Below, in pieces: positions 4,992-15,419 of a stretch of 64,000 nucleotides of DNA. Both the position numbers and the translations under genes were made by a program. Positions within the stretch are counted from its first letter, which is position 1. Every line of letters begins with the position of its first letter. The notes beneath the pieces were generated by a model, which saw nothing but the letters and a program-made list of their open reading frames with translations, was not told the DNA's origin and ran no database searches. The stretch covers positions 186,001-250,000 of the forward strand of contig NW_020843829.1 of assembly GCF_003704095.1 (NCBI RefSeq), in the 5' to 3' direction. The stretch is from Pocillopora damicornis. Lineage: Eukaryota.

Positions 4992-7900
4992 ATGGGTTGT
5001 TCTTCAAGCGCACAGGCGCGAAACGTTGAGAGAACTCCGCAACCAATTCAGGTCGCTGCTGCTCAAACGGCCGCGAACCAAGGAGGATCTGAGATGTCAC
5101 CCCAAGCAAACGTCGCTCCCACGAAACCCGTGAAGATCGAAAGTACAACAACTGCAGAAAATAACCAGGTGGTAAATGATCAGAAAGATGCCCCAAGCAC
5201 AGGTAACTGAATGTACAGACTGGTTTAAGTGGTTTTTTCCCGGGAAGAAATAAAGGTTCAGTTTTCCTAAGAATCGAGTGGTGTCAGTTGTTAAGATGCT
5301 TACGCTTCGATTCAACATCTGCGCGACAATGAAATCTGATATTTTTTTACTGCGGTTTGGGGAACACACAAAAATAAAGAAGTGGTTATTCGTCCTCGCA
5401 CTACCCTTTAATCGTGATTTCTAATAGGATTTAACTGGCTTATTGTGAAATAAACCGTCGTTAAACTGAGAATTTAAAGGTCATTTTTGATGCCGGGAAA
5501 TAAATAAAGCGCCATCTCAGAATAAATTGCTATATTGGCGCGCTGATCGCGATCAATGATACACCGTCCTATTTTAAGTTTGTATGTACCAGTTGGAGAC
5601 ATATTACTTGAATTCAAAACTATATAGAGGGAAATCGTTTTACTTCAAGAAAGAAAGAGCGGACATGTGAGAAATTAGAATACAAGCTTCTTATCAAATG
5701 AGAGATATTCTGACGTGTTTTAGCATGTGTCCTCTAACCATGCTAATAAAGAACGATTCATAGTCGGAAAGCGATTAATTTTAGTGTGGACACATAAAGT
5801 AAACTTTAAATCCTCAGCACGCATAATTGAAAGACTCTACGACTCGTACTAACCATATTTCTGAAACCTTTCATTTTTTTTTAATCAAAATTCAATTTTT
5901 AGTAGGGAAAAAACACGAAACCCTTGCCATGATATACCTGCTGTTATAAAATGGGAATAAAGGCGAAATGAAAATCATTTTAAATGCGCTTGATCTTCTA
6001 GATTAAAACTGACAATTGGAAATCCCATGTGTTTATACATCCAAAACTTCAGTTTGCATTGAACAAATACAATATACGGCTTTAGTGTGGCGAACCTCGA
6101 AATACATATCTTTCTATGAAAATCTTCACAAATCGAAGCAATTTTTTTCAGTTGCGAAAAGCACATTTAAATATTTTTCCCCAGTAGTGAACAATAATAT
6201 TTAATCAAGCACGGTAGAAAGGAATAAAATGAACAAATGGTTTTTGATTAGAAAACTGCAACAGTTGCCATGGTAGGAAATGAATTAAGACTAAACAATA
6301 TATATAGCCGTATCAGAAGCGTTTTTTTAATTGCGCAACGGATTTCTTGTAAATTAAACTTGTTTTGTCTAAATCCCAACTCTAATTAATACCACGAAAT
6401 TGTTTTTATTTCGATAAAGCTAAATAAGCATTAAGCATGTTCGAGAGGACGATGTAAACCGTGTCGTGTTTTGTTTCATTGGTTTTTATTTATTTATTTT
6501 TTCACTTGTCTATTCTAAAGTGTTTGTTTCAAGACAAAAGTGTTTTTAAAATTTTTGTCATGAGATACAAATGAATAGTTGCTATCGATATCATGCTGGA
6601 ACAAAGCTTGTCAGCAGTTTCTTCCTTTTATGAGTGGAGAGAAATCGTTCATCCGTGTAGCCTTTGAGCTAAATTATTCATTCAGCTAAATTGTCAACAA
6701 CTTTTTAGGTCTTGAGTTTTGCTTTCCCGAACGAAAAAAATTCGATCGTCAGAAATTTGTTCCTTCGTCAATTTGCTATTTTTCTGTGTAGTGAAGAAGG
6801 CTACTTTATGCACAGTCGTTTTCGACGAAAACAGTCGAAGTAAAAGAGTATTTAATGTCTATACTTCATTGCTAGACGACCATAAGTTACTCTGAATAAG
6901 ATAAAAAAACAGCTGCCAAGCGTTGGATAACTTTGTACCACTAGCGCTTTTGCACTATGTCGGTGACGAAAAAACGAACAACTGAGAAGTGACAGAGAAA
7001 AAAATCAGAATGGTATACTTAGTCTGGGAGTTATCAGATTTCTTTTGCGACACTATTAGGAGATATCTATGGAGTACAGAAATTTGCCTTGTCAACCTTT
7101 AGGCGCTGTGTTTTGGTAGAGGATTTTGAGGGAATGAACCAGCAAGTGTAAACGCGCCTTGCGTGTTGTAAGGTGGGGAAACTCGGCTGCAAATGAAGTA
7201 TTGTTACAGCTGAAATACCTAACTCCTTAGCTGTGCCTCTAGTGGAGTTATCATTGGCCAATTCTGCGCTTGCATTGACAGGAGCAATTCTCTGGTTTCG
7301 AAATAATTTGCAAGTTTTATTTCAGATTTTATCCATTAGTTGCAACTTTTAAAAAACCAACCCCAGAAATGTTGAAGCGGTTTATTGATGCGTTACTGTC
7401 GAGGAAACGTATGGAATATTTGAAATGATACTACTGGCTAAACGGGAATGCATGTTTATTGTTTTATTTTTATTTCAGAGCAACCAACTCAAGTAGATGG
7501 TAAACCACAAAGTTCCGTTCCCGAGAAAGCGAGCGAGAACGAACCGCGAGAAGATCCTCTCGGTGAAGAATCGAGACCTGAAGTAGTGGAGGAATCTCAA
7601 CAAGAAGTTGTACAAGGAAAGAAAGACGAACAAGTTAAACCACAGGAAGAGGAGGCGAAGAAAGACAAAGGAAGAGAACAGAGTGGATCAGGCGAAGAAA
7701 GCACGGCTCCCAGTAAAGACGAAGAACAAACTCAGCAACCGGCTGAGAGTGAAGTGAACGCCGAGGCCGCAGCGGAAAGCAGCGGTAGTGATAAACCTGA
7801 TGTTGAGCAAGTAGAGGAGCAGAATGAAGCTGTGAAAACAGAGGCGCAAGAAGGAACTGAAAGAGAACCAGAAGTAGCAAAGGAAGGTGAAGAGGCGGCT

Positions 7901-8260
7901 GCACCAGTGGACGGAGAAACGCCATCACAAGCAGAAAACGCAGAAGAGATGCCAGCTGCTGCTGATCAAACACAGCAATCGCAACCCGCAGCCGAAGAAT
8001 CTAAACCTGCGGAGGAAGAATCACAACCAGCGGCCGAGGAAACAAAACCTGAGGAACAAGTAGCGCAACCTGCGCCTGAAGAAGCGAATCCTGCGGCCGA
8101 AGAAGCGAAGCCCGCGGCCGAAGATTCGAATCTAGCGGCTGAGGAATCAAATCCCGCAGATGGAGAACCTCAAGCCGACGAACAGCAAGCAGCTGAAGAG
8201 CCGCAAAAAAGCGAAGAAGCGACACCGCAAGAGGAAACACCGGCTAGTGAGGACAGTTAA
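4992..8260 (+). CDS. Glutamate-rich, disordered, N-myristoylated/palmitoylated protein (~330 aa), ERICH5-like
   Basis: Exon 1 4992-5202 (MGCSSSAQARNVER...PST, phase-1 donor G|GTAACT) plus exon 2 7479-8260 (TTTCAG|AG, same phase). Gly2/Cys3/Ser6 acylation motif. E/A/Q/P-rich, with PAAEE(S/A/T)(K/Q/N) heptad repeats. Confidence 0.85.
7984..8170 (+). repeat. Coding 21-nt (7-aa) tandem repeat, PAAEESK-type
   Basis: QPAAEESK PAEEESQ PAAEETK ... PAAEEAK PAAEDSN LAAEESN in the translation. Confidence 0.7.
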
Positions 8261-14200: not shown

Positions 14201-15419
14201 CTATAGAGTCCATAACTTCTGGTGTTTATCCCCAGTTTTTGTGGCATGAAGAGACCAGGAGTATCTCTACTCCCACTTTGGGGGGGAAGAGGCTCCTTAT
14301 TCATCTTAGGTAATCTCATTGAATTTTGAGGGATTTCCCAAGCATAGGAATATATTTTCCAAGAATAAAGCACAAAAAAGGAGCCAGTATTCCAATTGGG
14401 ACCTCTTGATCTTGTGTCCAGCAGACTAATCACTTGGTAAACATGCCTCCCATCATGCTGTCACGTGATGCGAATTATCTTAATTTAATTATGGTTACAC
14501 TCACGTTTGGGTCTAGTCCCAGCTGTCCAGACACATACATTGTTTTGTCTGCAATTACAGCTTGGCTGTTCAAAATAGGAAGGAGCCAATATGAGTCTCT
14601 TTTAGAACACTATTTAGATTACCAGCTTACCACTTTCACAGCAGTTCTCTTGGTTGGCAAGAGAACTGATGTGCAAGTTGGAAGTCATGAGTTCGAGGCC
14701 TAATGAGACTACTCAAGGTGAGGCCTCAAAAAAATGTTGTAGGTCGTTCTGGTTGTGATCGAGACTTCGTTTCAGCTCACATGATTACACATCTCACGAT
14801 TGACACCCAGGAAGGGAGGGGGAAACTCCTCCACATAGGCTATGTAGGCATGCACAGCTCCAAGGAGTGTTGTTGAAGACCCCTTTTGGTCCGAAACAGG
14901 GTATCAATTTGATGCGTTTAGGTCGATCTTTCACGTCCCTCTAATTCTATTTTTCTCGATGCTACGGGCATACTCGTAACTTCTTCTTCGAAATATTTAC
15001 CTGTACACACCACGAATCGGCTGAACTCCCTTCGAAGTATGGACAATCTTTCTTACAGTATCCATGTGTAAATCTTAGGAGAAGTAACTTAAACTGAGTT
15101 GCTTCATGGACCATCGAGGGTGGAGAGGGGCAACGTTTTTGTCTCTCCTTCCTGAGAGCGACTCTCTCCGATCGCAAAGGTTTTCCAAAAAATAAACTTA
15201 CAAATTCCGTCTAAAATGAAAACTTAACGAGTACTTGAAACAATGCACGTGAGCGAGACTTTCAATTACTTATTTTTGTCTGCACATTTAATCAGTGTCG
15301 TCTGTCTTTGTACCCCGACGCACACTCCCTCGTATTTAACTTTGTTGATCTTACTTGTAAGGTCCAATGGCTCCAGGAGCTTTGGAAGTGCTTACTATTT
15401 TTCTGATTGTGGCAGCCAT
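11293..15419 (-). CDS. RIDA: 2-iminobutanoate/2-iminopropanoate deaminase (RidA/YjgF/UK114 family), 135 aa
   Basis: Seven GT-AG exons with consistent phases: 15419-15355, 14565-14505, 13753-13709, 13355-13301, 12676-12608, 11990-11935, 11349-11293. Motifs KAPGAIGPYNQAV, YVSGQLGLDP, VVKTTVLLADIGDF, PARAAYQVGNLPK, VEIEAVA. Confidence 0.97.
12354..12565. mobile_element. piggyBac-type MITE (~210 bp), subfamily B
   Basis: TTAA-ACCTTTAACACCC...GGGAGTTAAAGGG-TTAA. Interior shared with 19605, 50264, 56755. Confidence 0.75.
13040..13290 (-). mobile_element. SINE-like interspersed repeat
   Basis: Ends in GGGGCTTGAACCC (minus-strand B-box-like GGTTCAAGCCC). Non-coding, intronic. Confidence 0.45.
13382..13590. 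mobile_element. piggyBac-type MITE, subfamily A
   Basis: TTAA-CCCTTTAACTCCC...CTTAAAGGG-TTGA. Interior shared with 12053, 22262, 28765, 53600. Confidence 0.75.

What the first reader, a model, noticed from the sequence alone, without database searches (positions are those of the whole stretch)
4992..15419. Candidate cnidarian ERICH5: MGCSSSA acidic protein tail-to-tail with RIDA
Seen: a plus-strand ~330-aa Glu-rich disordered protein beginning MGCSSSA with a phase-1 first intron, convergent with minus-strand RIDA about 3 kb away. Recalled knowledge, to be verified: human ERICH5 (C8orf47, glutamate-rich 5) begins MGCSSSA, is Glu-rich and of similar size, and lies tail-to-tail with RIDA on 8q22. 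Inference: an orthologue hidden from ordinary similarity searches by low complexity, preserved in an ERICH5-RIDA microsynteny since the cnidarian-bilaterian ancestor. ERICH5 would then be an ancient lipid-anchored acidic protein family rather than a vertebrate novelty.
Basis: partly seen in the sequence, partly recalled or inferred. Interest (0 to 1): 0.85.

Follow-up and report, generated by a model that had tools for sequence, protein, structure and literature searches.

The report
Coral lipid-anchored acidic protein beside RIDA
A stony-coral gene for a fat-anchored, very acidic, unstructured protein sits tail-to-tail with RIDA just as ERICH5 does in fish, so it is probably, though not provably, the coral counterpart of that little-studied vertebrate gene.

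Summary
Window 4992-5202 plus 7479-8260 is a spliced, polyadenylated, single-copy gene with a phase-1 intron. It encodes 330 aa starting MGCSSSA, and exon 2 has net charge -57. Its stop lies 3,032 bp from the stop of a seven-exon RIDA gene on the other strand. The genome is Pocillopora or a close relative.

The gene and its convergent position are conserved in Desmophyllum and Porites, so they span both main stony-coral clades. The N-terminus varies among corals (MGCSSSA, MGCSASS, MGCGGSS).

I checked the vertebrate side with tools in two teleosts. In both, the gene convergent with RIDA starts MGCSSSS, has a phase-1 intron after a short first exon, and continues into an acidic exon. In Takifugu it lies in the order NIPAL2, POP1, RIDA, this gene, MATN2.

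Against deep orthology:
- Nothing beyond the first seven residues aligns better than shuffled controls.
- Three jellyfish have a CABIT/SAM gene in that position.
- Two unnamed invertebrate assemblies show no such gene.
- No other 8q22 gene is near in the coral.

My estimate is about 0.6 for ERICH5 orthology and 0.35 for coincidence. A conserved X-box plus forkhead module hints at expression in ciliated cells. The scan has not reported this on other DNA.

The parts
4800..4833 (+). Candidate promoter module at the 5' end of the transcript: a palindromic X-box-like site (4800-4812) and two forkhead-like sites (4817-4823, 4827-4833)
   Evidence: Regex scan. The block aligns among Pocillopora, Desmophyllum and Porites about 160-195 nt before the ATG. 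Its function is inferred, not shown.
4788..4991 (+). 5' untranslated region (minimum extent)
   Evidence: RNA contigs start at 4788, 4812, 4920 and 4993. An in-frame TAA lies at 4983-4985.
4992..5202 (+). Coding exon 1: 70 codons plus 1 base, starting MGCSSSA (myristoylation and palmitoylation motif)
   Evidence: The same start and junction appear in an unspliced transcript contig of a relative.
5203..7478 (+). Intron, phase 1, GT..AG, 2276 nt
   Evidence: The joint is present in contigs of four RNA runs. Splice signals were read directly.
7479..8260 (+). Coding exon 2 with stop: 259 full codons, 24.7% Glu, net charge -57, no aromatic residues, no Cys
   Evidence: Coral homologues were found.
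8261..9209 (+). 3' untranslated region. It is shown to 8700.
   Evidence: RNA contigs cover up to 8700, the end of the stretch laid, and the longest has about 509 more letters. Poly(A)-signal hexamers are listed.
11293..15431 (-). RIDA (2-iminobutanoate/2-iminopropanoate deaminase), seven coding exons, convergent with the acidic gene
   Evidence: Exon pieces lie at 15357-15431, 14505-14567, 13709-13759, 13302-13355, 12609-12677, 11935-11988 and 11296-11346, with stop TAG at 11293-11295. Identity to P. meandrina RIDA is shown. PF01042 hit. Single locus.

Best explanation
What it is. This is a real, expressed, two-exon gene of a Pocillopora-type stony coral. Its product has no signal peptide and starts Met-Gly-Cys.

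How it probably works (inferred from well-known Src-family and G-alpha biochemistry, not shown here). The Met is removed, Gly2 is N-myristoylated and Cys3 is S-palmitoylated. This pins the protein to the cytoplasmic face of a membrane. The remaining 320 or so residues form an unfolded, strongly negative tail (Glu/Ala/Gln/Pro-rich). That tail carries a few short motifs kept among corals: an EPREDPLGEES block and a C-terminal ASEDS end. The tail most likely acts as a membrane-tethered acidic brush, cation (Ca2+) buffer or docking strip. A conserved X-box and forkhead module suggests this happens in ciliated cells.

Evolution. The gene has stayed convergent with RIDA across stony corals. It is most likely the positional orthologue of vertebrate ERICH5. 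It shares ERICH5's place and orientation, its MGCxxS start, a short first coding exon closed by a phase-1 intron, and its acidic disordered body.
For: - Gene model and expression. A relative's unspliced transcript has the same start and junction.
- Disorder: composition; AlphaFold2 mean pLDDT 45.8 with no secondary structure; no Pfam hit.
- Coral conservation and position: Desmophyllum and Porites, where exon 1 starts MGCGGSSQARNVD, the intron is phase 1 and exon 2 ends ASEDS about 3 kb from RIDA. The coral-to-coral shuffle control gave z = 13.
- Fish counterpart: Takifugu and Denticeps. Both start MGCSSSS, have a phase-1 intron, an acidic exon 2, lie convergent with RIDA, and have POP1 on the other side.
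- Literature: human ERICH5 is myristoylated at Gly2 (PMC8689648). Myristate plus Cys3 palmitate anchors Fyn to the plasma membrane (PMC2132482).
- Protein language-model look-up: a chordate 'glutamate-rich protein 5-like' cluster ranked second of 7.7 million clusters. The score of 0.78 makes it a lead only.
- Copy number: both genes have a single locus.
- Promoter block.
Against: - Only the first seven residues align between coral and fish profiles. The rest of exon 1 was reached or beaten by 12 of 80 shuffles, and exon 2 by 42 of 80 and 42 of 60. Smith-Waterman z-scores were 0.76 and -0.18.
- MGCxxS is a generic acylation signal, and the coral N-termini differ from one another.
- In Rhopilema and two further jellyfish assemblies the gene convergent with RIDA is a CABIT/SAM (GAREM-like) gene. 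No acidic or MGC-start open frame lies between.
- Two unnamed invertebrate assemblies show no such gene within 8-10 kb.
- In the coral, POP1 is on another contig. The only L7Ae-family hit on the window's contig is RPS12. The flanks hold Sp-like, NME6-like, TGIF-like and UCKL1-like genes.
- Lipidation, localisation and the cilia link are all inferred.
Confidence: 0.6

Rival explanations
1. Chance adjacency. The coral gene is a lineage-restricted (stony-coral or hexacoral) dually acylated acidic disordered protein unrelated by descent to ERICH5. It happens to lie convergent with RIDA. The MGCxxS start and acidic make-up would reflect common biophysical solutions, as in BASP1 and Leishmania HASPB.
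For: - No order-specific similarity beyond seven residues.
- Word-seeded HMMER searches of 5.8 billion proteins with exon 2 and with the N-terminal 120 residues found only stony-coral relatives.
- Jellyfish and two other invertebrate assemblies lack it beside RIDA.
- There is no extended 8q22-type synteny.
- Coral N-termini vary.
Against: Five independent features coincide with the fish gene: neighbour, orientation, MGC start, a phase-1 intron after a short first exon, and an acidic disordered body of similar length (330 aa against 378 aa in Denticeps). MGC-start proteins are roughly 0.2% of animal proteomes; this figure is from my own knowledge and was not measured here. Fish ERICH5 itself diverges beyond alignment between two teleosts outside exon 1 and the start of exon 2. 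Lack of similarity across phyla is therefore expected even under orthology.
Confidence: 0.35
2. A coral acid-rich protein of the skeletal organic matrix (CARP/SAARP type), secreted to guide calcification.
For: It is very acidic, low in complexity and found in calcifying corals.
Against: It has no hydrophobic signal peptide. The N-terminus is a cytosolic acylation motif. It is rich in Glu rather than Asp (5% Asp). The definition of CARP/SAARP proteins used here is from my own knowledge.
Confidence: 0.03
3. Not a protein-coding gene: a spliced non-coding RNA with a chance open frame.
For: The sequence is low in complexity, and the gene is unannotated in Porites and mis-annotated in Desmophyllum.
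Against: The 330-codon frame, its start, the intron phase and its C-terminal end are kept among corals down to 36-46% identity. Substitutions and indels between these corals preserve the frame.
Confidence: 0.01

Closest known systems
Vertebrate ERICH5 (glutamate-rich protein 5, C8orf47)
   Same: Both lie convergent with RIDA. Both start MGC followed by small residues and Ser. Both have a short first coding exon closed by a phase-1 intron, then a large acidic, disordered, Cys- and aromatic-poor exon. Lengths are similar: 330 aa against 378 aa in Denticeps. This was tested in Takifugu and Denticeps. Human ERICH5 is a proven NMT substrate (PMC8689648).
   Different: There is no alignable sequence after residue 7. 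The coral first exon is 70 codons against 29-30 in fish. The fish motifs (TKPEESNGDT, TIEDQxQLPVQ) and the coral motifs (EPREDPLGEES, ASEDS end) are not shared. The coral locus lacks POP1, NIPAL2 and MATN2. The coral promoter carries an X-box and forkhead block. From titles returned by the ERICH5 paper search, mammalian ERICH5 appears mainly in studies of corneal and squamous epithelia.
BASP1 / GAP43 / MARCKS group of acylated, acidic, disordered membrane proteins (features from my own knowledge)
   Same: An N-terminal lipid anchor followed by a long Glu/Ala/Pro/Lys-rich unfolded tail. Probably works in a similar way as a membrane-tethered charged polymer.
   Different: BASP1 and MARCKS combine myristate with a basic cluster, and GAP43 uses two palmitoyl Cys. 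The coral protein has Gly2 plus Cys3 and no basic cluster after the anchor. There is no sequence similarity and no Pfam hit.
Leishmania HASPB (hydrophilic acylated surface protein B) and dually acylated flagellar proteins of trypanosomatids
   Same: A dual N-terminal acylation signal on a hydrophilic, repetitive, unfolded protein. Dual acylation is used for flagellar or ciliary membrane targeting (PMC3491706, PMC5617996; review PMC6678300).
   Different: These belong to an unrelated lineage with no sequence similarity. They are an analogy of mechanism only.

Membership tests
ERICH5 (vertebrate glutamate-rich protein 5) | N-terminal Met-Gly-Cys acylation motif with Ser at position 6 | tested here: met
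   Coral: MGCSSSA, MGCSASS and MGCGGSS. Fish: MGCSSSS. Profile alignment covers 7 columns with score 27.
ERICH5 (vertebrate glutamate-rich protein 5) | Glu-rich, disordered body without a folded domain | tested here: met
   24.7% Glu and net charge -57. pLDDT 45.8 with no secondary structure. Fish exon 2 is 16% Glu with net charge -141.
ERICH5 (vertebrate glutamate-rich protein 5) | Match to the family model Pfam PF27861 (Glu-rich_5) | not testable with these tools
   PF27861 is not in the local Pfam copy. The local Pfam gives no family for the protein.
ERICH5 (vertebrate glutamate-rich protein 5) | Sequence similarity to vertebrate members beyond the acylation motif | tested here: not met
   Smith-Waterman against shuffles gave z = 0.76 and -0.18. 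hhalign against column shuffles: the rest of exon 1 was matched by 12 of 80, exon 2 by 42 of 80 and 42 of 60.
ERICH5 (vertebrate glutamate-rich protein 5) | Convergent (tail-to-tail) neighbour of RIDA | tested here: met
   Window: stops 3,032 bp apart. Also in Desmophyllum and Porites, and in Takifugu and Denticeps.
ERICH5 (vertebrate glutamate-rich protein 5) | Short first coding exon closed by a phase-1 intron, then one large acidic exon | tested here: met
   First coding exon lengths: window 211 nt, Porites 196 nt, Takifugu 88 nt and Denticeps 91 nt. All four are phase 1.
ERICH5 (vertebrate glutamate-rich protein 5) | Wider 8q22-type neighbourhood (POP1, NIPAL2, MATN2, RPL30) | tested here: not met
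   POP1 is on contig C2182. The L7Ae-family hit on the window's contig is RPS12. The flanks hold Sp-like, NME6-like, TGIF-like and UCKL1-like genes.
ERICH5 (vertebrate glutamate-rich protein 5) | Presence at the same place in lineages between corals and vertebrates | tested here: inconclusive
   Absent beside RIDA in three jellyfish and in two unnamed invertebrate assemblies. No named sea anemone, octocoral, Hydra or bilaterian invertebrate locus could be fetched.
BASP1/MARCKS-type myristoyl-electrostatic-switch proteins | Basic cluster next to the myristoylated Gly | tested here: not met
   The first 35 residues hold two Arg, no Lys and two Glu. Exon 1 as a whole has net charge -1.
Coral skeletal acid-rich proteins (CARP/SAARP) | Signal peptide and Asp-rich secreted body | tested here: not met
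   The N-terminus is MGCSSSAQARN, with no hydrophobic stretch. Exon 2 is 5% Asp against 24.7% Glu.
RIDA / YjgF / L-PSP (the neighbouring gene) | PF01042 domain and full-length identity to animal RIDA | tested here: met
   PF01042 hit on exon 5. Five of the seven exon translations occur verbatim in P. meandrina RIDA, and the other two differ only at the junction residues.

The most novel reading that the evidence does not exclude
ERICH5 is not a vertebrate novelty. It would be a eumetazoan gene more than 600 million years old that has stayed convergent with RIDA in stony corals and vertebrates. It would have kept only its dual-lipid anchor, its intron phase and its acidic, unfolded nature. Its original setting may have been ciliated cells, given the RFX and forkhead control seen in corals.
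Probability: 0.5. Interest if true: 0.6.

Novelty: new member of a known kind. Interest (0 to 1): 0.5.

Why it matters
ERICH5 is a human protein of unknown function. About all that is established is that NMT myristoylates it. A coral counterpart would date it to the cnidarian-bilaterian ancestor. It would also show which features selection keeps: the lipid anchor, the negative charge, the intron phase and the position beside RIDA. The features that drift would be almost all of the sequence. That would offer tractable systems and a testable lead (ciliated cells, RFX/FOXJ1 control) for its function.

It is also a worked example of an orthologue that similarity searches cannot see and only position and gene structure reveal. 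The gene is unannotated in Porites and mis-modelled in Desmophyllum, so coral gene sets can be corrected. If the adjacency is chance, the finding shrinks to a coral-specific acylated acidic protein of modest interest.

Tried and rejected
- Pfam scans of both exons and of the relative's full-length protein gave no real family. The only hit was a herpesvirus glycoprotein model at E = 0.29.
- PF27861 is not in the local library.
- The search for homologous proteins with exon 2 found three coral relatives and one low-complexity false hit. With residues 1-120 of the relative's protein it found only the query's own cluster.
- The protein language-model look-up on exon 1 alone gave nothing relevant.
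- A full-text paper search for the hexapeptide after the Met found only an unrelated paper.
- P0002 is not on record in the contig index. One invertebrate locus came back without DNA.
- Extended synteny was sought and not found. POP1 is on another contig. The L7Ae-family hit on the window's contig proved to be RPS12. No GAREM-like gene lies within 40 kb to the left or in the window.
- The PF01042 whole-genome scan misses even the window's own RIDA because its exons are short. I used the Pocillopora RIDA protein instead.
- MAFFT misplaced short exon pieces in two trial RIDA alignments. I used a reduced alignment.
- The last homologue search returned mostly fish RIDA, so no named bilaterian invertebrate locus was reached. 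Cluster look-ups gave no species names for the ENA and Logan hits.
- I considered counting all MGC-start acidic genes in the genome and dropped it.
- The biomineralisation and non-coding readings were rejected for the reasons given under rival explanations.
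Full report
THE OBSERVATION

On the plus strand an ATG at 4992 follows an in-frame TAA at 4983-4985. The open frame runs to a GT donor at 5203. An AG acceptor at 7477-7478 opens a second exon that ends in TAA at 8258-8260. Exon 1 is 211 nt, so the intron is phase 1, and the product has 330 residues.

Contigs from four polyA RNA-seq runs of three studies each carry the exact 5202|7479 joint (GT..AG, 2276 nt skipped). 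They extend from at least 4788 to beyond 8700. A 1.3-kb transcript contig from a related coral is 70% identical in exon 2. It holds the whole reading frame unspliced, with the same MGCSSSAQARNVE start, an upstream in-frame stop and the same junction.

RIDA lies on the minus strand in seven coding exons between 11293 and 15431. Five of its exon translations occur verbatim in Pocillopora meandrina RIDA, and the other two differ only in residues at the exon junctions. The window therefore comes from Pocillopora or a very close relative. The two stop codons are 3,032 bp apart. Each gene has one locus in the 234-Mb assembly.

THE PROTEIN

Exon 1 is Ala/Gln/Ser/Thr-rich and nearly neutral. Exon 2 is 24.7% Glu, 15% Ala, 11% Gln and 10% Pro. 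It has net charge -57, pI 4.05, no aromatic residue and no Cys. No Pfam family matches. AlphaFold2 on the relative's full-length protein gives a mean pLDDT of 45.8 and no secondary structure.

The start Met-Gly-Cys with Ser at position 6 is the classic signal for N-myristoylation of Gly2 and palmitoylation of Cys3. In Fyn this signal gives rapid plasma-membrane anchoring (PMC2132482). The lipidation is inferred here, not shown.

CONSERVATION IN STONY CORALS

Exon 2 finds relatives only in corals. In Desmophyllum pertusum the gene lies upstream of RIDA exons on the opposite strand. Its start reads MGCSASSQ, in an assembly with frameshifts.

In Porites evermanni the gene is unannotated. Exon 2 contains EPREDPLGEES and ends ASEDS. 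It lies about 3 kb beyond the end of RIDA on the opposite strand. Exon 1 starts MGCGGSSQARNVD and ends in phase 1.

The gene, its structure and its convergent position are thus shared by both main stony-coral clades. The exact 'SSSA' is not. A shuffle control shows that coral-to-coral similarity in exon 2 is real (z = 13).

THE VERTEBRATE SIDE, TESTED WITHOUT HUMAN SEQUENCE

I reached RIDA loci through a RIDA exon search and a profile of separate exon rows.

- Takifugu rubripes: the order is NIPAL2, POP1, RIDA, a 743-residue no-Pfam gene on the opposite strand, then a MATN2-like gene. The no-Pfam gene starts MGCSSSSAQTVEQ. Its first coding exon is 88 nt with donor G|GTGAGC and an acceptor before CG, so the intron is phase 1. 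Its large exon is 16% Glu and 15% Pro, with net charge -141.
- Denticeps clupeoides: POP1, RIDA and a convergent 378-residue gene. That gene starts MGCSSSSSQ, has a 91-nt first exon (phase 1) and an acidic second exon.

These genes occupy the position of human ERICH5. ERICH5 is a Gly2-dependent NMT substrate (PMC8689648). It is listed in the 8q22.2 block that also includes RIDA and NIPAL2 (PMC7954304). The human N-terminus itself was not checked with a tool.

IS THERE SEQUENCE HOMOLOGY?

No, apart from the first seven residues.

- Smith-Waterman scores of coral against fugu exon 2 equal those of shuffled sequences (z = 0.76; -0.18 with block shuffles).
- Profile-profile alignment of coral and fish exon 1 aligns only MGCSSS[A/S].
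- With those columns removed, 12 of 80 column shuffles score as well.
- For exon 2, 42 of 80 and 42 of 60 shuffles score as well.

The two fish genes themselves align only in exon 1 and the first 25 or so residues of exon 2. Silence across phyla is therefore uninformative.

A language-model look-up ranked a chordate 'glutamate-rich protein 5-like' cluster second for the full-length relative, at a score (0.78) that is only a lead. Exon 1 alone gave nothing.

SYNTENY ELSEWHERE

In the jellyfish Rhopilema esculentum the order is a ligand-gated channel gene, RIDA, then a convergent CABIT/SAM (GAREM-like) gene 1 kb away. Two metagenome-derived assemblies have RIDA exons almost identical to Rhopilema's and show the same order. 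They have no acidic or MGC-start open frame.

Two further unnamed invertebrate assemblies show nothing comparable within 8-10 kb. One has the order strumpellin, RIDA, POP1.

In the coral, POP1 is on another contig. The only L7Ae-family hit on the window's contig is RPS12. The neighbours are an Sp-type zinc-finger gene on the left and NME6-like, TGIF-like and UCKL1-like genes on the right. Only the gene pair itself is shared with vertebrates.

WEIGHING

For orthology, five features coincide: neighbour, orientation, MGCxxS start, a short first exon with a phase-1 intron, and an acidic disordered body of similar length. MGC-start proteins are rare in animal proteomes (about 0.2%, from my own knowledge, not measured here).

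Against orthology: the motif is generic, the coincidence was noticed after the fact, jellyfish lack the arrangement, and no intermediate lineage is documented.

I put orthology at about 0.6 and coincidence at about 0.35.

FUNCTION

The protein most likely acts as a lipid-tethered polyanionic tail on the cytoplasmic face of a membrane. It could serve as a charge brush, a low-affinity cation buffer or a docking strip. Its kept motifs (the EPREDPLGEES block and the acidic Ser-containing C-terminus) may be binding or phosphorylation sites. All of this is inference.

I found a palindromic X-box-like site at 4800-4812 and two forkhead-like sites at 4817-4833. They lie at the transcript's 5' end, in a block that aligns among Pocillopora, Desmophyllum and Porites. 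The X-box pattern I used occurs 35 times in the window counting both strands, so the conservation carries more weight than the match itself. This points to ciliated cells. Dual acylation is a known route to ciliary and flagellar membranes (PMC6678300, PMC5617996).

WHAT WAS LEFT OUT

The full-length queries used the relative's unspliced transcript contig.

VERDICT

Noticed in passing
window 15000-15074 (-): A second, diverged copy of RIDA's first coding exon (MDTVRKIVHTSKGVQPIRGVY) lies about 300 bp downstream of the usual one (MAATIRKIVSTSKAPGAIGPY). The Oculina patagonica RIDA model P0128 starts with this variant, and Desmophyllum has both copies. They look like conserved alternative first exons that change the loop around the GPY motif.
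   Followed up: partly
window 4800-4833 (+); L003 about 9690-9730; L018 about 26620-26660 (-): An X-box-like palindrome followed by two forkhead-like sites is conserved among three corals just upstream of, or at, the transcript start of the acidic gene. A GCGCGTGACAGAC block about 60 nt further on is also conserved.
   Followed up: partly
L017 (Rhopilema), L008-L011 (two jellyfish-like assemblies): The order ligand-gated channel gene, RIDA, convergent CABIT/SAM (GAREM-like) gene is shared by three scyphozoan-type genomes. One haplotype (L010) has a Ty1/copia-type retrotransposon inserted right after RIDA exon 5.
   Followed up: partly
L019 (unnamed ENA assembly ERZ25069810): RIDA lies between a strumpellin (WASHC5) gene and POP1. 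RIDA-POP1 linkage therefore exists outside vertebrates, although in a different orientation.
   Followed up: no
window about 30500-33100 (+), 43179-43901 (-), 50600-59300 (+), 61294-62691 (-): Other genes in the window: NME6-like nucleoside diphosphate kinase exons, a single-exon TALE homeobox (TGIF-like) open frame, uridine kinase/UPRT (UCKL1-like) exons, and a 449-466-aa ankyrin-repeat open frame. They were identified by eye from conserved motifs only.
   Followed up: no
L003 9886-10090 and 14600-15300 (Desmophyllum pertusum MU825408.1); L018 21506-26465 (Porites evermanni): The public Desmophyllum model for this gene (218 aa) is broken by apparent frameshifts in the assembly. The Porites annotation has no model for it.
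   Followed up: partly
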